From positions 1 through 64,000 of the IMG/VR virus record IMGVR_UViG_3300011113_000640: a stretch of 64,000 nt of DNA; one strand, given 5' to 3'. A program made the position numbers and the translations under genes. Below, one piece after another: positions 41,126-45,884 of the stretch (position 1 is the stretch's first letter; every line of letters starts with the position of its first letter). The notes beneath the pieces are model-generated. The model was not told where the DNA came from and made no database searches. It saw only the letters and a program-made list of their open reading frames with translations.

Positions 41126-41851
41126 TTAGACAACAGAACCAGCCCAGGGCGTGGTCGACAACCATTTCTTATAGATACTGTCAGCTGTGGTCTGATGCTG
41201 TGCCAAATGATACGGTAAACCTGCCAGCATGGAGATTTTGTCCTGTACGGTTTCATACAGCGATCTTGATTCAGCCCATTTGGCATCATCTTCTGCCACC
41301 CAGCTCTGCATTTTGGTTTCCGTGATTTCAATGTGGAACTGCATGGCCAGATGTGGACCCATGGCCCAGGCCTGATTGGGGCATACTGGGCTGGTAGCCA
41401 CTCGCACTGCACCTGCAGGTATGCCAAACGATTCATAGTGCCAATGCGCCACGGTGTTGGTGGGGGTGTCTCCAAACCACTCTCGAGCCACGTCTAGATT
41501 TTCATATTGGATGGGTTGCCATCCTATCTCTGGTTGAGCACTAGGACCTATAGTTGCACCCAGGGCACGGCTCATAAGTTGTCCACCTAGACAATGTCCA
41601 ACCACCGGACGATCCAAGCGCATGGCCTGCAGGATAAGGATTTCTGCTTGACGATTACTGAGCAAAGGATCATTGGCACTCATGCCACCGCCCATGACAG
41701 CCAGGGCCGAGTAAGGTTCTATACTAGCAGGAAACTCTTCATCGGCGCCAGCATTGAATATGACATAGTCAACACGATGCCGCTCCAACCATGTGGTTAG
41801 ATAAGCGGCATTTTCGGGTAGTTGATGTTGTAAGATTGCTACTGGTCGCAT
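41126..41851 (-). CDS. Class I glutamine amidotransferase (GMP-synthase-like GATase1)
   Basis: MGGGMSAND, GHCLGGQLM, HWHYE, QFHIE (Cys-His-Glu triad). Confidence 0.9.
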   Translation of the reverse strand: MRPVAILQHQLPENAAYLTTWLERHRVDYVIFNAGADEEFPASIEPYSALAVMGGGMSANDPLLSNRQAEILILQAMRLDRPVVGHCLGGQLMSRALGATIGPSAQPEIGWQPIQYENLDVAREWFGDTPTNTVAHWHYESFGIPAGAVRVATSPVCPNQAWAMGPHLAMQFHIEITETKMQSWVAEDDAKWAESRSLYETVQDKISMLAGLPYHLAQHQTTADSIYKKWLSTTPWAGSVV

Positions 41852-41878: not shown

Positions 41879-42886
41879 TTATTTTTTGATCAAAGCCCAC
41901 TGCTCGCTACGGATGCGATCTGTGACTGCCTTGGGCAGGGGAACATAGTCTAGATCAAGAGCACTTTTACCACCCTTGTCCCAAGCATAAGCAAAGAACT
42001 TGAGTACTTCTTGTGTGGCTTTGACGTCTTTGGGTTCACGATATACCAACACAAACGTGGCACCAGTGATGGGCCAAGCATCAGCACCCTTTTGATTCAC
42101 CAGGCTGATACCCATGCCCGGTGTTTTAAACCAGTCAGCGTCCTTGGCAGCTGCGGCAAAAGTCGTGTCATCGGGTTGCACGTATCGTCCATCACGATTC
42201 TGCATCTTCACGTGAGGAATGTTGTTTTTCTTGGCATAGGCATATTCCACATAGCCAATCGAACCTTTCACACGGTTGACCACAGCGGACACACCTTCAT
42301 TGCCCTTGCCACCCACGGCTGTGGCTGGAATCCATTTTACAGCGGCACCTTTGCCCATGCGTTCAGCCCAGGACTTGGATACTTCGTTCAAATAGTCTGT
42401 GAAGATAAATGTTGTGCCGGATCCATCAGCACGATGCACCACAGTGATTGGCAAGTCGGGCAAGGTCTTGCCAGGATTCAAGGCCGCAATCCGAGCATCG
42501 TTCCACTTGGATATAGTTCCAAGATAGATGTCTGCCAAGACTGCGCCTGTGATCTGTAGTTCACCAGGTTTGAAACCATCAAGGTTTATGATAGGAACCA
42601 CACCGCCCAACACAGTGGGGAACTGGATCAAGCCGGCCTGGGCTAGATCTGCTACATTCATGGGTGCATCAGTGGCACCAAAGTGAACTGTGCCAGCACG
42701 GATCTGCTTGATACCGCCCGAGCTACCAATGCTCTGATAGTTGAGCTTGACACCGGTGATTTTTTGATAATCCACTGACCATTGCGAGTAGATGGGAAAT
42801 GGGAATGTGGCACCTGCTCCTGTGATTTCCACAGCAGACACCGAAGTCGCTAATACAGTCAATACAGCGGCTAAAAACTTTTTCAT
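41879..42886 (-). CDS. pstS: Phosphate ABC transporter substrate-binding protein
   Basis: GAGATFPFP, YQSIGSSGG, FGATDAP, HRADGSGTT, GGKGNEGV, IGYVEYAYA, WPITGATF. Confidence 0.97.
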   Translation of the reverse strand: MKKFLAAVLTVLATSVSAVEITGAGATFPFPIYSQWSVDYQKITGVKLNYQSIGSSGGIKQIRAGTVHFGATDAPMNVADLAQAGLIQFPTVLGGVVPIINLDGFKPGELQITGAVLADIYLGTISKWNDARIAALNPGKTLPDLPITVVHRADGSGTTFIFTDYLNEVSKSWAERMGKGAAVKWIPATAVGGKGNEGVSAVVNRVKGSIGYVEYAYAKKNNIPHVKMQNRDGRYVQPDDTTFAAAAKDADWFKTPGMGISLVNQKGADAWPITGATFVLVYREPKDVKATQEVLKFFAYAWDKGGKSALDLDYVPLPKAVTDRIRSEQWALIKK

Positions 42887-42930
42887 TGGATCTCCTTGAT
42901 AGTTGTTGTGCGAAGGCACACGTTTACTTA

Positions 42931-42959
42931 ATTACAATTTTGTTACAGTTTTATGACAT
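42931..42959 (-). promoter_or_regulatory. Pho box (PhoB site), three 11-bp-spaced repeats
   Basis: Minus strand ATGTCAT-AAAA-CTGTAAC-AAAA-TTGTAAT versus the E. coli consensus CTGTCAT-A(A/T)A(T/A)-CTGTCA(C/T), directly upstream of pstS. Confidence 0.85.
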
Positions 42960-42987
42960 GTCCGGTTACGGCTCCGGCGACACCTGA

Positions 42988-43995
42988 TCATTGTGCCCGA
43001 TTCACTTCTACTAAATTGTCACGGAATATGCGCCAACATGCGTCCCAGGTCCAACGCAGGCTGGCCTGTTCTACCTGGTCACGATCCAAGGTCAAGCAAC
43101 GTTCCACGGCATGTGCCAGGTTCCAGTCTAGATATCCCGTCACACCCGACTCCACTATGTCTATGGGCCCGGGCACAGGATATGCTGCCACCGGAGTGCC
43201 GCAGGCCAGGGCTTCGATGTTGACCACACCAAAGGTATCAGCTCGGCTGGCGAACACAAACACATCGGCCTGTGCATAGTAGCCGGCCAACTCCAGACCA
43301 CGCTGTGCGCCCACAAATTCCACTGTGGGATATCTGCGTTCCAATTCGGCTCGATAAGGACCATCTCCCACTATGATTTTGCGACACCAAGGCATGTCCA
43401 GCCGACAAAAATCTTCCAGACCTTTTTCACGACTCACACGACCTACGCTGAGCAGTACAGGTCGTACGTTTGAGCCAGATCGTAAACTACTGCTAAAGTA
43501 GGTGCGGTCCACACCGCGAGTCCAGACTTGAAGATTCTCAAAGCCACGAGCTGTTAACTCTTGCTCGATGCTGGCGGTTGTGACCAACACACGTTGACTA
43601 TTTTTGTGGAACCACTGCAGATACCACCAAGTCCACGACTCTGGAACATGATACATGCGTTTCAAAAACTTGGCAAAGTCTGTGTGGTAACTTGTATTGT
43701 AAGGAACACAGTTACGTTCGCACCACCAGCGGGCAAAGAAACCTACCGGACCTTCTGTAGCGATGTGTATAAAGTCTGGACGTAGCGTCTTAATTTTTTT
43801 GCTGATACCGTGCGGCCAGCACAGACGAACTTCAGGATAACCAGGGCAAGCAAAATTAGGGAACTGAGAGGGATCAACATAAACAACACGATAGCCGTCA
43901 CGGTCAGCATGATCTTCCAAGTTCCGGAAAGTTGTGACCACACCGTTGATTTGACCGGGCACATTGTCAGTTATGATCAGGATCGTTTTTGACAT
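42988..43995 (-). CDS. GT4 glycosyltransferase, Agt-like glycolipid (MGDG/GADG) synthase
   Basis: QINGVVTT, YPEVRL, HIATEGPVG, TSYHTDF, WTRGVD, VGRVSREKG, VGDGP, DTFGVVNIEALACGTPVAA. Confidence 0.85.
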   Translation of the reverse strand: MSKTILIITDNVPGQINGVVTTFRNLEDHADRDGYRVVYVDPSQFPNFACPGYPEVRLCWPHGISKKIKTLRPDFIHIATEGPVGFFARWWCERNCVPYNTSYHTDFAKFLKRMYHVPESWTWWYLQWFHKNSQRVLVTTASIEQELTARGFENLQVWTRGVDRTYFSSSLRSGSNVRPVLLSVGRVSREKGLEDFCRLDMPWCRKIIVGDGPYRAELERRYPTVEFVGAQRGLELAGYYAQADVFVFASRADTFGVVNIEALACGTPVAAYPVPGPIDIVESGVTGYLDWNLAHAVERCLTLDRDQVEQASLRWTWDACWRIFRDNLVEVNRAQ

Positions 43996-44150
43996 GACGT
44001 GACTACCTTGAAACTGTCAAACTTGAGCCAATAGGCCACCGTGGCCTGTGCTCGCACGCATTCTGCTTCGGTGGCAAACTCAATGCTTGCTCTTCCGGGC
44101 ACGTCTTGAGGATTGTTCACGTGAACTGCTATCAACATCAGCAACCACAT
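43977..44150 (-). CDS. 57-aa hypothetical protein between plcP and agt
   Basis: Hand translation MWLLMLIAVHVNNPQDVPGRASIEFATEAECVRAQATVAYWLKFDSFKVVTSCQKRS. Overlaps both neighbours. Confidence 0.5.
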   Translation of the reverse strand: MWLLMLIAVHVNNPQDVPGRASIEFATEAECVRAQATVAYWLKFDSFKVVTSCQKRS

Positions 44151-44904
44151 CATCTGTCTCCTTGGTCCATGTAACTATTTCCCACTGTCCTGAATGATGT
44201 TCAACTAGGGCTGTCATTGACTCAACCCAGTCTCCATCGTTCATGTAGACTACACCATCTATTTCTTTGATTTCTGCGTGGTGGATGTGTCCGCATATAA
44301 CACCATCGAATCCACGCTTCTTGCAGTACGCGGCAAGATTACGTTCGAACTGAAACAAAAAGTCACTAGCTTTCTTGACTTTGTATTTGAGATATTTGCT
44401 TAGACTCCAGTAGCCCAAGCGTAGTCGACGACGCACAGCATTAAATTGTGAATTTAGATTCAATACAAAATCATACAGTTTATCACCTAAAAATGCCAGC
44501 CATGGTGCCAATCTGGTGATGCCGTCAAACAAGTCACCGTGTGTGACTAGATAGTGTCGACCGTCTACGCCAATGTGTTCTGCTTGATTTACAACTTCGA
44601 TTAGGCCAAATCCAATGCCCAATGGTATAAGTGGTCTTAGAAATTCATCATGATTGCCAGCCACATAGATTACTCTGGTACCACGTTTGGCATGCCCCAT
44701 TACTCTACGGATCACATTGGTATGGCTCTGTTTCCAACGCCATCGGTTCTGTTGTATTTTCCAGGCGTCAATGATATCACCTACAAGATAAAGTGTTTCG
44801 CAGGTGTGGTGTTTGAGAAAGTTGTTGAGTTGTTCAGCCTTGCAGTCCTTGGTACCAAGGTGTACATCTGAAATGAATATTGATCTGTAAGTGCGGCCCG
44901 TCAT
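44080..44904 (-). CDS. plcP: Calcineurin-like metallophosphoesterase, PlcP-type phospholipase C (often mis-annotated as UDP-2,3-diacylglucosamine hydrolase)
   Basis: YRSIFISDVHLG, LVGDIID, GNHDE, HGDLFD, WLAFLGD..Y, GYWSLS.YLK.KVK.A..F..FE, DGVICGHIH, YMNDGDWVES.TALVE. Confidence 0.85.
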   Translation of the reverse strand: MTGRTYRSIFISDVHLGTKDCKAEQLNNFLKHHTCETLYLVGDIIDAWKIQQNRWRWKQSHTNVIRRVMGHAKRGTRVIYVAGNHDEFLRPLIPLGIGFGLIEVVNQAEHIGVDGRHYLVTHGDLFDGITRLAPWLAFLGDKLYDFVLNLNSQFNAVRRRLRLGYWSLSKYLKYKVKKASDFLFQFERNLAAYCKKRGFDGVICGHIHHAEIKEIDGVVYMNDGDWVESMTALVEHHSGQWEIVTWTKETDDVVADVDSSSREQSSRRARKSKH

Positions 44905-44925
44905 GCATTATTTACAGGCCCGTGT

Positions 44926-44943
44926 GTTACAGTTGTGTTACGA
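44926..44943 (-). promoter_or_regulatory. Pho-box-like tandem repeat upstream of plcP
   Basis: Minus strand TCGTAAC-ACAA-CTGTAAC with an 11-bp period, followed by TAAATA and ATG 44904. Confidence 0.6.
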
Positions 44944-45243
44944 CAGTCGCATCACTGCCATGAGTGCTTCGTTGGCATCCCAGAACACCCAATACCAGCG
45001 TTGATGTGTGTCGTTGTCTAGAAACACGGGTTCGGCTCTGTAGCGTAGGGCTCGGATGTCCGCATCCATGGCTTCCCATGTTGACCAGGCAAAACCACGC
45101 AAGCCCACACGTCGGTTGCGGTCCACGGGATCAACTACCAGCACTGACGCTGGTGGATTGTCGTAGTAACGATCTACCTGTTTTTGTTTTTCGTAATAGG
45201 GAATATGGCGTTCAAGCCATGTGGGCCAGTCTACAACTTGCAT
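44938..45243 (-). CDS. Hypothetical protein
   Basis: 101-aa ORF. Confidence 0.6.
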   Translation of the reverse strand: MQVVDWPTWLERHIPYYEKQKQVDRYYDNPPASVLVVDPVDRNRRVGLRGFAWSTWEAMDADIRALRYRAEPVFLDNDTHQRWYWVFWDANEALMAVMRLS

Positions 45244-45446: not shown

Positions 45447-45884
45447 TTACTGATCGGCCTTGTGAGCTGCCAAAGTCTTGGTGAACTTGTTGGCGTGTGA
45501 GCGTTCTGCCTTGGCCAGGGTCTCAAACCAGTCAGCGATTTCGTCAAAGCCTTCGTCACGTGCTTCCTTGGCCATGCCAGGATACATGTCACTGTATTCA
45601 TGGGTCTCGCCATGGATAGCAGCTTCAAGAGCTTCTGCAACGGTCTTGGCGCTCATGCCTGTACCTGGCTCGCCAGCACCACCAGTGATCAAATACTCCA
45701 TGTGACCATGGGCATGACCTGTTTCACCTTCAGCAGTTGAGCGGAATACACTTGCTACATCTGGTGCACCTGCTACGTCGGCCATGTTTGCGAAATACAA
45801 ATAACGACGATTTGCCTGGCTCTCGCCCGAAAATGCCGCTTTCAAGTTTTCTTCTGTGCGTGTTCCTTTTACGCTTTTTGCCAT
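45447..45884 (-). CDS. Rubrerythrin (short form without rubredoxin domain)
   Basis: [39 protein letters not shown] di-iron motifs. Confidence 0.93.

What the first reader, a model, noticed from the sequence alone, without database searches (positions are those of the whole stretch)
42931..44943. Host PhoB boxes wired into phage genes; plcP may have dual Pho and late control
Seen: a triple 11-bp-period box before pstS (ATGTCAT/CTGTAAC/TTGTAAT) and a double box before plcP (TCGTAAC/CTGTAAC), the latter followed 11 nt later by TAAATA. Established: cyanophage pstS is controlled by host PhoR/PhoB through Pho boxes. Inference: this phage senses host P status through PhoB and switches on lipid mining only when P is limiting.
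Basis: partly seen in the sequence, partly recalled or inferred. Interest (0 to 1): 0.7.

Follow-up and report, generated by a model that had tools for sequence, protein, structure and literature searches.

The report
Phosphate-sensing promoters on jumbo-phage genes
A 320-kb uncultured phage, which is not a cyanophage, carries phosphate-scavenging and membrane-lipid-remodelling genes behind promoters that copy the host's phosphate-starvation (PhoB) binding sites and place them at a fixed distance from the phage's own late-promoter motif, a design shared by well over a hundred related viral contigs.

Summary
All five heptamers and TAAATA lie where stated, on the minus strand.

The pstS boxes match the published PHO-box consensus 18/18, and the triple array is unique in the 320-kb genome. 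The plcP pair (16/18) is at chance level on its own. It becomes convincing through its position and its conservation.

In related viral contigs, two boxes + 11 nt + TAAATA occur 94 times against 0.1 expected. An unbiased scan of the viral collection found the motif almost only before plcP, pstS, a 214-aa unknown gene and a Na/Pi cotransporter. A 21-nt-spacing form precedes phoX.

The nearest cellular PstS proteins are from freshwater Burkholderiales. Their own pstS promoters have the same layout (TGTCAY-N5-TGTCAY, 10 nt, TAnAGT).

The phage has no PhoB-type regulator and no psbA. It does encode a T4 gp55-like late sigma factor.

TAAATA followed 4-7 nt later by ATG is a genome-wide signal. It precedes portal and virion genes and has no Shine-Dalgarno sequence.

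So Pho control plus late control is plausible for plcP. In most relatives it is plausible for pstS too. "Only when P is limiting" is therefore too strong, and the cyanophage framing is wrong.

A new covarying RNA motif sits beside the pstS boxes. Nothing here has been tested experimentally.

The parts
41879..42886 (-). pstS, the periplasmic phosphate-binding protein (335 aa)
   Evidence: NCBIfam PstS equivalog NF008171, E 1.6e-122, above the cutoff. Pfam PBP_like_2. The nearest cellular relatives are Burkholderiales, at 57-70% identity.
42892..42897 (-). Shine-Dalgarno sequence AAGGAG of pstS
   Evidence: Read directly from the sequence. It is conserved in relatives.
42907..42920 (-). Hairpin in the pstS leader (TGTGC-CTTC-GCACA), at the predicted 5' end of the pstS transcript
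   Evidence: TGTGC-N2-4-GCACA or TGTG..CACA recurs at the same place in many related pstS leaders.
42925..42930 (-). TAAGTA, the -10-like / late-promoter-variant hexamer of the pstS promoter. TTAAGT at 42931-26 is the alternative reading with a 10-nt spacer.
   Evidence: It lies 11 nt after box 2, at the position that TAAATA occupies in most relatives. In this genome TAAGTA is itself found more often than control hexamers just before ORF starts: 7 of 59 sites, against about 3-5% for controls.
42931..42959 (-). pstS Pho-box array: ATGTCAT (42959-53), CTGTAAC (42948-42), TTGTAAT (42937-31)
   Evidence: Matches the published PHO-box consensus 18/18, twice. Unique in the genome. Conserved in relatives.
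42958..43005 (-). Conserved two-hairpin RNA-like element with a pair between its two loops. It lies at the GT/pstS junction, and the GT stop codon TGA (42990-88) lies in its first loop.
   Evidence: Covariance-model hit of 49.2 bits, E 9e-13, the only copy in the genome. Covariation in 30 distinct copies. No Rfam match.
42988..43995 (-). Family 4 glycosyltransferase (agt-like), 335 aa
   Evidence: Pfam Glyco_trans_1_4, Glycos_transf_1 and Glyco_transf_4. 42% identical to the glycosyltransferase downstream of plcP in a freshwater SAR11-like MAG.
43977..44153 (-). Conserved 58-aa ORF between plcP and the glycosyltransferase. It overlaps the 3' end of plcP by 74 nt.
   Evidence: tblastn finds it at 39-98% identity at the same position in most of 80 related loci. 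It belongs to no known family.
44080..44904 (-). plcP-like metallophosphoesterase of the LpxH-like type, 274 aa
   Evidence: Pfam Metallophos. It scores far below the LpxH equivalog cutoffs (47.5 against 134 bits). The motifs DVH, GDIID, GNHD and GHIHH are intact. 48-53% identical to plcP homologues in Limnohabitans, a SAR11-like MAG and Burkholderiales MAGs.
44909..44914 (-). TAAATA, a late-promoter-type motif, 4 nt before the plcP ATG
   Evidence: It is part of a genome-wide TAAATA-N4-7-ATG signal. It is conserved 4-7 nt before plcP in relatives.
44926..44943 (-). plcP Pho-box pair: TCGTAAC (44943-37, containing the TAA stop of the upstream ORF) and CTGTAAC (44932-26)
   Evidence: Matches the PHO-box consensus 16/18. 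The same pair, followed by 11 nt and TAAATA, is seen in 27 of 75 distinct plcP upstream regions.
44938..45243 (-). Upstream 101-aa ORF of unknown function. There is no terminator between it and plcP.

Best explanation
The window belongs to a roughly 320-kb uncultured phage of the T4 superfamily. Its portal is nearest to the Atu_ph07/PA5oct group. Its host is most likely a freshwater betaproteobacterium of the Burkholderiales type.

The phage carries a phosphate-stress cassette: plcP, a 58-aa ORF, an agt-like glycosyltransferase and pstS. plcP and pstS each have a composite promoter. Two (for pstS, three) direct repeats of TGTMAY at an 11-bp period occupy the -35 region. These are a proteobacterial Pho box. 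Eleven nucleotides downstream lies TAAATA (TAAGTA for pstS).

Inferred mechanism:
- In a P-starved host, phosphorylated host PhoB binds the repeats. It recruits host sigma-70 RNA polymerase, as it does at the host's own pstS promoter. The phage genes therefore come on early in proportion to host P stress.
- Later in infection, the same TAAATA is read by polymerase carrying the phage's gp55-like late sigma factor, whatever the P status.
- plcP would be transcribed as a leaderless or nearly leaderless mRNA. The ATG lies 4 nt after TAAATA and there is no Shine-Dalgarno sequence.
- pstS would have a leader of about 33 nt with a 5' hairpin and a strong Shine-Dalgarno sequence.

Shown: the sequences, their statistics, their conservation, their specificity for P genes, the matching architecture of bacterial pstS promoters, the presence of gp55 and the absence of PhoB in the phage.

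Inferred: PhoB binding, which polymerase uses which element, transcript 5' ends, expression timing and enzyme activities.
For: Boxes:
- They match the PHO-box consensus (PMC8601176) at 18/18 for pstS and 16/18 for plcP.
- The triple array is unique in the genome.

Conservation:
- Among 61 distinct viral pstS upstream regions, 37 have box-N6-box, 11 nt, TAARTA. Among 75 distinct plcP upstream regions, 27 do.
- In 1.29 Mb of viral loci the composite occurs 94 times against 0.1 expected.
- The spacing at distinct sites is 11 nt (69 sites), 21 nt (10) or 22 nt (8), and almost nothing else.

Specificity for P genes:
- In the loci fetched around plcP and pstS, 109 of 120 sites precede pstS or plcP. 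The others precede phoX (PF05787, E 8.5e-122) and a 214-aa gene.
- In an unbiased scan of the viral collection, 89 sites preceded plcP (33), pstS (30), the 214-aa gene (6), a Na/Pi cotransporter, an outer-membrane-protein-like gene and unnamed membrane proteins.

Host-type architecture:
- 51 of 79 bacterial pstS loci, mostly Burkholderiales, have TGTCAY-N5-nnTMAY, exactly 10 nt, then TAnnnT.
- TGTAAY boxes are also seen before a bacterial pstSCAB operon (L147) and in L090.

No phage regulator: no Trans_reg_C or Response_reg domain was found in the 93%-complete genome.

Late promoter:
- 40 of 159 TAAATA sites lie 2-12 nt before an ATG that opens an ORF of 60 aa or more. For permuted hexamers that do not overlap the motif the figure is 2-8%; three that overlap it (AAATAT, ATAAAT, TATAAA) also reach 8-9%.
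- Genes preceded this way include the portal and three virion structural proteins.
- Only 1 of the 40 has a Shine-Dalgarno-like sequence.
- A late sigma factor is present (phrog_12791, E 3e-73; T4 gp55 query E 6.5e-7).
- T4 and cyanophage late promoters are TATAAATA and NATAAATA, and overlapping early and late promoters are described for RB49 and S-PM2 (PMC2984593).

Tandem form: several relatives have box, 10 nt, a good TAnnnT hexamer, 5 nt, TAAATA. In these the sigma-70 -10 element and the late motif are separate.

Biological precedent:
- plcP-agt operons with Pho boxes in bacteria (PMC4796936).
- PhoBR control of cyanophage pstS (cited in PMC10976474).
Against: - There is no binding, expression or transcript-end evidence. 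The one RNA run found holds only low-depth, diverged contig fragments.
- The plcP box pair in this genome is at chance level on its own.
- TAAATA is a poor sigma-70 -10 hexamer. It matches 3 of 6 positions and lacks the T at -7. The spacing is 11 nt, not the host's 10.
- TTGAC -35 elements are not found upstream of other TAAATA sites. Use of TAAATA by sigma-70 is therefore unproven.
- Viral boxes are mostly TGTAAY (167 against 33), whereas bacterial boxes are mostly TGTCAY (122 against 7). This could point to a different binding protein.
- Bioinformatic Pho-box prediction in phages has been shown to be unreliable (PMC10976474).
- The host is unknown.
- About 8 of the 17 sites with 21-22-nt spacing lack any recognisable sigma-70 -10 hexamer.
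- A T4 gp45 query found no homologue.
- A sigma-70-like promoter upstream of the rubrerythrin gene (45952-45924), with no terminator in between, means plcP could also be transcribed by read-through.
Confidence: 0.6

Rival explanations
1. Single control. The boxes are PhoB sites, and at these two promoters TAAATA/TAAGTA is simply the -10 element of a PhoB/sigma-70 promoter. There is no meaningful late expression. Its resemblance to the late motif would be incidental, or would reflect AT-rich -10 preferences.
For: - The hexamer lies at a fixed 11 nt from box 2. This is almost the 10 nt that separates box and -10 in 51 of 51 bacterial pstS promoters with a pair.
- In this window pstS has TAAGTA, and TTAAGT is one letter away from the host-type TAAAGT.
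Against: - TAAATA is otherwise a late-type signal without a -35 element. It precedes about 40 genes, including portal and virion genes.
- Relatives with a separate, good TAnnnT hexamer still keep TAAATA 5 nt further on.
- plcP keeps TAAATA 4-7 nt before its ATG even in relatives that lack boxes.
Confidence: 0.15
2. The repeats are bound not by host PhoB but by an unrecognised phage-encoded activator, playing the role that MotA plays at T4 middle promoters. That activator would switch on this cassette at a set time of infection, independently of phosphate.
For: - The viral boxes differ systematically from bacterial ones (TGTAAY against TGTCAY).
- The spacing is 11 nt, not 10.
- Most genes of this phage have no known function.
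- Sites one helical turn further away (21-22 nt) without a sigma-70 -10 hexamer are unusual for PhoB promoters.
Against: - The motif is found only before phosphate-acquisition genes: pstS, plcP, phoX and a Na/Pi cotransporter. It is not found before replication or other middle-type genes.
- A at that box position is allowed in known PHO boxes (consensus M; PMC8601176). TGTAAY boxes precede bacterial pstSCAB operons.
- Some relatives use TGTCAY.
- No winged-helix OmpR-type domain was found in the genome.
Confidence: 0.1
3. This is a cyanophage and the array is a cyanobacterial-type Pho box, that is, three PyTTAAPyPy(T/A) repeats. This is the frame the first reader implied.
For: - Three repeats at an 11-bp period are the cyanobacterial pattern (consensus quoted in PMC10976474). 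The three 8-mers match it at 5, 6 and 7 of 8 positions.
- A T4-type late sigma factor and TAAATA are also found in cyanomyoviruses (PMC2984593).
Against: - G is invariant where the cyanobacterial consensus has T.
- PstS is about 37% identical to cyanophage PstS and 57-70% identical to Burkholderiales PstS.
- No psbA was found.
- The best portal matches are phages of Agrobacterium, Sinorhizobium and Pseudomonas.
- There is no nucleotide match to any of 50,697 phage records.
Confidence: 0.04
4. Chance resemblance with no regulatory role.
For: The plcP pair alone is within chance expectation in this genome.
Against: - 94 composite sites against 0.1 expected in related loci.
- Rigid spacing.
- Near-exclusive association with P genes in an unbiased scan.
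Confidence: 0.02

Closest known systems
PhoB-dependent promoters of proteobacteria (E. coli phoA/pstS type, and the Burkholderiales pstS promoters seen here)
   Same: - Direct 7-bp repeats of TGTMAY with a 4-bp A/T-rich linker (11-bp period), taking the place of the -35 element.
- A fixed short distance to a -10-like hexamer.
- They drive pstS and other P-starvation genes.
   Different: - The boxes are mostly TGTAAY rather than TGTCAY.
- The spacer is 11 nt rather than 10.
- The downstream hexamer is the phage late motif TAAATA, not TAnAGT.
- They sit on a phage genome.
- Binding is untested.
Cyanophage pstS/phoA regulation by host PhoBR (P-SSM2; S-PM2d, PMC10976474)
   Same: A T4-superfamily phage carries host-derived P-acquisition genes whose promoters carry host Pho boxes, so phage gene expression follows host P stress.
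   Different: - A different host group and a different box type.
- The cassette includes lipid remodelling (plcP-agt), which the literature searches run here did not find described as a phage auxiliary gene.
- The boxes are at a fixed distance from the late-promoter motif.
- The conservation is far clearer than for the S-PM2d predictions.
Bacterial plcP-agt lipid-remodelling operon with a Pho box (Sebastian et al. 2016, PMC4796936, 'type 2' context)
   Same: An LpxH-like metallophosphoesterase is followed by a family 4 glycosyltransferase and preceded by a Pho box.
   Different: - It is phage-borne.
- A conserved 58-aa ORF is inserted between the two genes.
- The start context is leaderless.
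- The enzyme activities are not shown.
T4-type late promoters (TATAAATA/NATAAATA, gp55-dependent) and the overlapping early/late promoters of RB49 and S-PM2 (PMC2984593)
   Same: - The TAAATA core and the lack of a -35 element.
- A gp55 homologue is present.
- The motif lies before structural genes.
- Overlap of a host-sigma promoter with a late promoter.
   Different: - Here the motif lies 4-7 nt before the ATG with no Shine-Dalgarno sequence, which implies leaderless mRNAs.
- The overlapping host-type promoter depends on an activator (Pho) rather than being constitutive early.
Pelagibacter phage Mosig EXVC030M (MT647606), a cultured pelagimyophage
   Same: - pstS and a plcP-like gene (50% identity) are adjacent.
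- plcP has TAAATA, 5 nt, then ATG.
- pstS has TAAATA, a hairpin and a Shine-Dalgarno sequence.
- The shared intergenic region has direct repeats at an 11-bp period.
   Different: - The repeats read TTTTAAC/ACTTAAC.
- The two genes are divergent.
- There is no agt-like glycosyltransferase next to plcP.
- The genome is 141 kb.

Membership tests
Proteobacterial PhoB-dependent (Pho-box) promoter | Two or more direct 7-bp repeats close to CTGTCAT, separated by 4 A/T-rich bp (18-bp PHO box, NTKTMAYHWWHYNKTMAY) | tested here: met
   pstS matches 18/18 for box pairs 1+2 and 2+3. plcP matches 16/18 (consensus from PMC8601176).
Proteobacterial PhoB-dependent (Pho-box) promoter | The box replaces the -35 element and lies about 10 bp upstream of a -10 hexamer | tested here: inconclusive
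   The distance is fixed, at 11 nt to TAAATA/TAAGTA or 10 nt to nTAAAT/TTAAGT. The hexamer is a weak sigma-70 -10 element. Bacterial comparators have exactly 10 nt to TAnnnT.
Proteobacterial PhoB-dependent (Pho-box) promoter | Association with Pho-regulon genes | tested here: met
   The composite precedes pstS, plcP, phoX and a Na/Pi cotransporter, and almost nothing else.
Proteobacterial PhoB-dependent (Pho-box) promoter | Binding by phosphorylated PhoB, and induction that depends on phosphate and on phoB | not testable with these tools
   This needs EMSA or footprinting and reporter assays. The only RNA run found was uninformative.
T4-type late promoter (gp55-dependent) | A TATAAATA-like motif at -10 with no -35 element | tested here: met
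   The TAAATA core is present. Genome-wide the base before it is variable (A, G or T). There is no TTGAC enrichment upstream.
T4-type late promoter (gp55-dependent) | The phage encodes the late sigma factor gp55, together with gp33 and the gp45 clamp | tested here: inconclusive
   A gp55 homologue is present. A T4 gp45 query found nothing. gp33 was not searched for.
T4-type late promoter (gp55-dependent) | The motif precedes late (virion) genes | tested here: met
   It precedes the portal and three virion structural proteins, among about 40 genes. It also precedes DNA ligase and others.
T4-type late promoter (gp55-dependent) | Late, replication-coupled timing of transcripts that start just downstream | not testable with these tools
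   No infection time course exists for this uncultured phage.
Cyanobacterial Pho box / cyanophage | Three PyTTAAPyPy(T/A) repeats, and a cyanobacterial host | tested here: not met
   G is invariant at consensus position 2, and the 8-mers match 5-7 of 8. There is no psbA. The PstS and portal affinities are proteobacterial and jumbo-phage.
PlcP-Agt lipid-remodelling module | An LpxH-like metallophosphoesterase that is not LpxH, with intact metal-binding motifs | tested here: met
   Pfam Metallophos. LpxH equivalog score 47.5 against a cutoff of 134 bits. The motifs DVH, GDIID, GNHD and GHIHH are present.
PlcP-Agt lipid-remodelling module | An adjacent agt-type family 4 glycosyltransferase in the same transcription unit | tested here: met
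   A GT4 gene lies 85 nt downstream of plcP (its ATG overlaps the small ORF) and is conserved in most relatives. It is 42% identical to the glycosyltransferase following plcP in a SAR11-like MAG.
PlcP-Agt lipid-remodelling module | Phospholipase C activity on membrane phospholipids, and glycolipid synthesis | not testable with these tools
   This needs expression and lipidomics.

The most novel reading that the evidence does not exclude
The host response regulator PhoB may act directly with the phage's own late transcription machinery, that is, polymerase carrying the gp55-like sigma factor at TAAATA, and not only with sigma-70.

The boxes keep a strict helical phase with TAAATA. The spacing is 11 nt, or 21-22 nt, which is one turn more. 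About half of the one-turn-further sites have no sigma-70 -10 hexamer in between. A host nutrient sensor would then tune phage late gene expression through a hybrid promoter that has no described counterpart.
Probability: 0.12. Interest if true: 0.85.

Novelty: new variant of a known kind. Interest (0 to 1): 0.62.

Why it matters
Host-controlled phage auxiliary genes are documented mainly for marine cyanophages. This finding extends the principle in four ways.

- It extends it to a large, abundant family of uncultured jumbo phages, apparently freshwater and infecting heterotrophic bacteria.
- It adds membrane-lipid remodelling (plcP-agt), phoX and Na/Pi transport to the set of phage genes wired to the host Pho regulon.
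- It provides an unusually clean, conserved promoter design: Pho box, 11 nt, late motif. This can be tested directly in reporters and in vitro.
- It gives a simple sequence signature for finding phosphate-responsive genes in viral metagenomes, including unknown ones such as the 214-aa and 58-aa proteins.

It would also bear on how phage infection alters phosphorus cycling and lipid composition in P-limited lakes.

Tried and rejected
- Nucleotide search of the cassette against 50,697 phage records: no match.
- tRNA scan of the window and five other loci: none found.
- Rfam search of 42800-45100 at E<=5: only a spurious lncRNA hit.
- RNA-run search: one metatranscriptome, held as contigs. It contained only low-depth, diverged fragments of pstS, the glycosyltransferase and plcP. 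It gave no strand or 5'-end information and could include DNA. It cannot be used for start sites or expression.
- T4 gp45 as a query against the genome: no match. This is not evidence of absence.
- Test of whether TAAATA serves generally as a sigma-70 -10 element (TTGAC 16-18 nt upstream): not seen.
- Host identification: the search for homologous proteins with PstS returned only unnamed metagenomic relatives, mostly phage. The host remains inferred from PstS affinity only.
- A freshwater SAR11 host was considered, because its pstSCAB and plcP have TGTAAY/TTTAAC boxes. It was judged unlikely for this 46% GC phage, but it is not excluded for AT-rich relatives.
- Literature searches for phage plcP, or for Pho boxes in phages of heterotrophs, found nothing specific.
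- No complex or structure prediction was run. None would give a verdict on protein-DNA binding.
Full report
**What is in the sequence.**
All genes in this part of the window are on the minus strand. Read in the direction of transcription, they are:
- a rubrerythrin gene (45884-45447);
- two small ORFs;
- plcP (44904-44080), a calcineurin-type metallophosphoesterase;
- a 58-aa ORF (44153-43977);
- a family 4 glycosyltransferase (43995-42988);
- pstS (42886-41879);
- a glutamine-amidotransferase-like gene.

- Before pstS: ATGTCAT (42959-53), CTGTAAC (42948-42) and TTGTAAT (42937-31) at an exact 11-bp period. TAAGTA (42930-25) follows at once, then a hairpin (42920-07), AAGGAG (42897-92) and the ATG.
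- Before plcP: TCGTAAC (44943-37, containing the stop codon of the upstream ORF), CTGTAAC (44932-26), 11 nt, TAAATA (44914-09), 4 nt, and the ATG at 44904.
- An in-frame TAA lies two codons upstream of that ATG. The N-terminus aligns with relatives. The plcP start is therefore firm, and it has no Shine-Dalgarno sequence.

**Is it more than chance?**
The window is the first 64 kb of a single 320,541-bp viral record that is 93% complete.
- The triple array is unique in that genome, with zero expected.
- Against the published cross-species PHO-box consensus NTKTMAYHWWHYNKTMAY (PMC8601176), pstS box pairs 1+2 and 2+3 both match 18/18.
- The genome holds 7 exact matches against 0.9 expected. The other five are antisense and inside ORFs.
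- The plcP pair matches 16/18. Sites of that quality are as frequent as chance predicts (294 against 323). Taken alone it proves nothing.
- The combination of a box, 9-13 nt and TAARTA occurs only three times in the genome: before plcP, before pstS, and once as a single box inside an ORF.

**What kind of phage this is.**
It is not a known cyanophage.
- The cassette has no nucleotide match among 50,697 phage records.
- PstS is about 37% identical to cyanophage PstS and 54% to enterobacterial PstS.
- The portal is 49-52% identical to those of the jumbo phages Phosso, Atu_ph07 and PA5oct.
- No psbA was found.
- The nearest cellular PstS proteins, at 57-70% identity, are almost all from freshwater Burkholderiales: Limnohabitans, Polaromonas, Rhodoferax, Hydrogenophaga, Acidovorax and Polynucleobacter.
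- plcP homologues at 48-53% identity occur in Limnohabitans, in a SAR11-like freshwater MAG (where an agt-like glycosyltransferase follows), and in Burkholderiales MAGs.
- The host is therefore most likely a freshwater betaproteobacterium. This is an inference from gene affinity only.

**Comparative evidence for the boxes.**
plcP has 259 relatives in viral contigs at 75-91% identity, and pstS has 448.
- plcP, the 58-aa ORF and the glycosyltransferase form a conserved module. pstS lies upstream or downstream of it, or elsewhere.
- Of 61 distinct pstS upstream regions, 37 carry GTMAY-N6-GTMAY, exactly 11 nt, then TAARTA.
- Of 75 distinct plcP upstream regions, 27 carry it. A further 11 have the same elements 20-23 nt apart.
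- In 1.29 Mb of these loci the composite occurs 94 times against 0.1 expected.
- At distinct sites the spacing is 11 nt (69), 21 nt (10) or 22 nt (8), and almost nothing else.
- In the loci fetched around plcP and pstS, the gene downstream is pstS or plcP at 109 of 120 sites. The rest include phoX (PF05787, E 8.5e-122) and a 214-aa protein of unknown function.

That sample was centred on the two genes. I therefore scanned the whole viral collection with the bare motif TGTAAY-N5-TGTAAY-N11-TAAATA. The 89 sites in the 80 loci returned gave:
- 33 before plcP;
- 30 before pstS;
- 6 before the 214-aa gene;
- 8 before other genes, among them a Na/Pi cotransporter (PF02690), a cyanophage-type outer-membrane-protein-like gene and unnamed membrane proteins;
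- 12 with no ORF of 50 aa or more within 80 nt, or cut by a locus end.

The motif is thus a marker of phosphate-acquisition genes. That is the expected behaviour of a Pho-regulon operator. It is not the expected behaviour of a general phage promoter.

**Comparison with bacterial promoters.**
In 79 bacterial pstS loci, 51 have TGTCAY-N5-nnTMAY followed by exactly 10 nt and a TAnnnT hexamer (TAAAGT, TAGAGT, TACAGT and others). The phage promoters have the same plan. There are two systematic differences.
- The boxes are mostly TGTAAY (167 against 33 TGTCAY). Bacteria use TGTCAY (122 against 7).
- The distance to TAAATA is 11 nt.

A at that box position is allowed in the published consensus. TGTAAY boxes also precede a genuine pstSCAB operon in a SAR11-like MAG, and pstS in a 773-kb Burkholderiales contig. 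The phage genome encodes no OmpR/PhoB-type DNA-binding domain and no receiver domain.

**The TAAATA element.**
- In this genome, 40 of 159 TAAATA sites lie 2-12 nt (mostly 4-7) before an ATG that opens an ORF of 60 aa or more. For permuted hexamers that do not overlap the motif the figure is 2-8%; three that overlap it also reach 8-9%.
- Only one of the 40 has a Shine-Dalgarno-like sequence.
- The genes include the portal, three virion structural proteins and DNA ligase.
- The genome encodes a homologue of the T4 late sigma factor gp55 (T4 query E 6.5e-7; phrog_12791 E 3e-73).
- T4 and KVP40 late promoters are TATAAATA and cyanomyovirus ones are NATAAATA. Phages without MotA are thought to use overlapping early and late promoters (PMC2984593).
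- TAAATA is therefore best read as this phage's late promoter. Its closeness to the ATG implies leaderless or near-leaderless late mRNAs (inference).
- TAAGTA, the pstS variant in this window, is also found more often than control hexamers just before ORFs (7 of 59), including two large genes in the virion-gene region.
- Across relatives, plcP keeps TAAATA 4-7 nt from its start. pstS keeps a 22-48-nt leader with a hairpin and a Shine-Dalgarno sequence.

**How the two elements relate.**
- In most relatives, and in this window, TAAATA sits where a -10 element should be relative to the Pho box.
- Several relatives have a tandem form instead: box, 10 nt, a good TAnnnT hexamer (TATAAT, TAAAAT, TACTAT, TAACAT, TACAAT), 5 nt, TAAATA. 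This shows that the host-type -10 element and the late motif can be separate elements kept side by side. It favours dual control.
- However, about 8 of the 17 distinct sites with 21-22-nt spacing have no recognisable -10 hexamer. The boxes nevertheless stay in helical phase with TAAATA.
- TAAATA is a poor sigma-70 -10 element, and other TAAATA sites have no -35 element.
- Which polymerase uses TAAATA at the Pho promoters is therefore open. A direct PhoB effect on the late enzyme cannot be excluded.

- The core interpretation is well supported by sequence statistics and comparative data. That interpretation is host PhoB boxes on phage P genes, with plcP under both Pho and late control. It has not been tested experimentally.
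- The cyanophage frame is wrong.
- The third pstS box occupies the promoter spacer and may be incidental.
- Expression 'only when P is limiting' is inconsistent with a late promoter.
- Read-through from upstream is also possible. A sigma-70-like site lies at 45952-24 and there is no terminator in between.
- The literature warns that predicted Pho boxes in phages often fail experimental tests (PMC10976474). The conservation seen here is far stronger than in that case.

**By-product.**
A 45-nt element at 42958-43005 lies between the end of the glycosyltransferase gene and the pstS boxes.
- It is the only copy in the genome (49 bits).
- It recurs in at least 39 distinct versions in related phages.
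- It lies just after the stop codon of pstS, the glycosyltransferase or the 214-aa gene. It is often followed by a terminator, by a Pho promoter, or directly by the plcP ATG.
- It forms two hairpins with abundant compensatory changes, plus a pair between the two loops that is never broken (AU 21, GC 8, CG 1). Overall 95% of cells are paired, against about 30% in slid controls.
- It has no Rfam match. In five candidate host-type genomes the best hit was only 18.8 bits.
- Its function is unknown.

**Novelty.**
- PhoBR control of cyanophage pstS and Pho boxes on bacterial plcP-agt operons are both known.
- The full-text searches run here found no description of a phage-borne plcP-agt module. They also found none of Pho boxes on phages of heterotrophic bacteria, or of a Pho box at a fixed distance from a late promoter.
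- I class it as a new variant of a known kind.

Noticed in passing
window 42958-43005 (-): A conserved two-hairpin element with covarying stems and a covarying pair between its loops. It has conserved loop sequences (AAnGAT.. and ..CGTAA). It is single-copy in this genome but present in at least 39 distinct versions next to pstS, glycosyltransferase and plcP genes of related phages. It has no Rfam match. It is a candidate new RNA motif of the phage phosphate cassette.
   Followed up: partly
Window examples: TAAATA before the ATGs at 41851(-), 2043(-), 5219(+), 14326(-), 33785(-), 59654(-); genome-wide in G000: About 40 genes have TAAATA 4-10 nt before the ATG and no Shine-Dalgarno sequence. 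They include portal and virion genes. This implies widespread leaderless late mRNAs in this jumbo phage.
   Followed up: partly
G000:C1:208222-209124 (L166:1378-2280, minus strand), outside the window: A homologue of the T4 gp55 late sigma factor (phrog_12791, E 3e-73). A T4 gp45 clamp query found nothing.
   Followed up: partly
window 43977-44153 (-): A 58-aa ORF is conserved between plcP and the glycosyltransferase in most related phages. It overlaps the plcP 3' end by 74 nt, belongs to no family, and is absent from the one bacterial plcP-agt pair examined (L249).
   Followed up: partly
L037:7987-8631; also L051, L052, L070, L179 and six loci: A 214-aa protein of unknown function (it starts MRLEDLAARLV) repeatedly sits behind the same Pho-box/TAAATA promoter. 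It is a candidate new phosphate-stress gene of phages.
   Followed up: partly
L244:241-2454; L271:4101-4568; L310:5870-6235; L287:2238-3239: In relatives, Pho-box/TAAATA promoters also precede a phoX alkaline phosphatase with a twin-arginine signal (21-nt tandem form), and, at 11-nt spacing, a Na/Pi-cotransporter fragment, a cyanophage-type outer-membrane-protein-like gene, and an unnamed multi-pass membrane protein.
   Followed up: partly
window 42907-42920 (-): A hairpin TGTGC-CTTC-GCACA lies at the predicted 5' end of the pstS mRNA. The same TGTG..CACA stem recurs in the pstS leaders of many relatives, and a hairpin occupies the same place in phage Mosig.
   Followed up: no
Viral loci L001-L246 compared with bacterial loci L085-L164: Phage Pho boxes use TGTAAY (167 against 33 TGTCAY), whereas bacterial pstS promoters use TGTCAY (122 against 7). 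The reason is unknown. Possibilities are AT bias, tuned affinity, or avoidance of a modifiable cytosine.
   Followed up: no
L379 (Pelagibacter phage Mosig, MT647606, 93031-94866): In this cultured pelagimyophage, pstS and a plcP-like gene (annotated as LpxH) are divergent neighbours. Both have TAAATA, and plcP has TAAATA-5 nt-ATG. The intergenic region has TTTTAAC/ACTTAAC repeats at an 11-bp period. It is a possible experimental model.
   Followed up: partly
window 45447-45884 (-) and 41126-41851 (-): A rubrerythrin gene and a glutamine-amidotransferase-like gene flank the phosphate cassette. Rubrerythrin travels with the cassette in several relatives.
   Followed up: no
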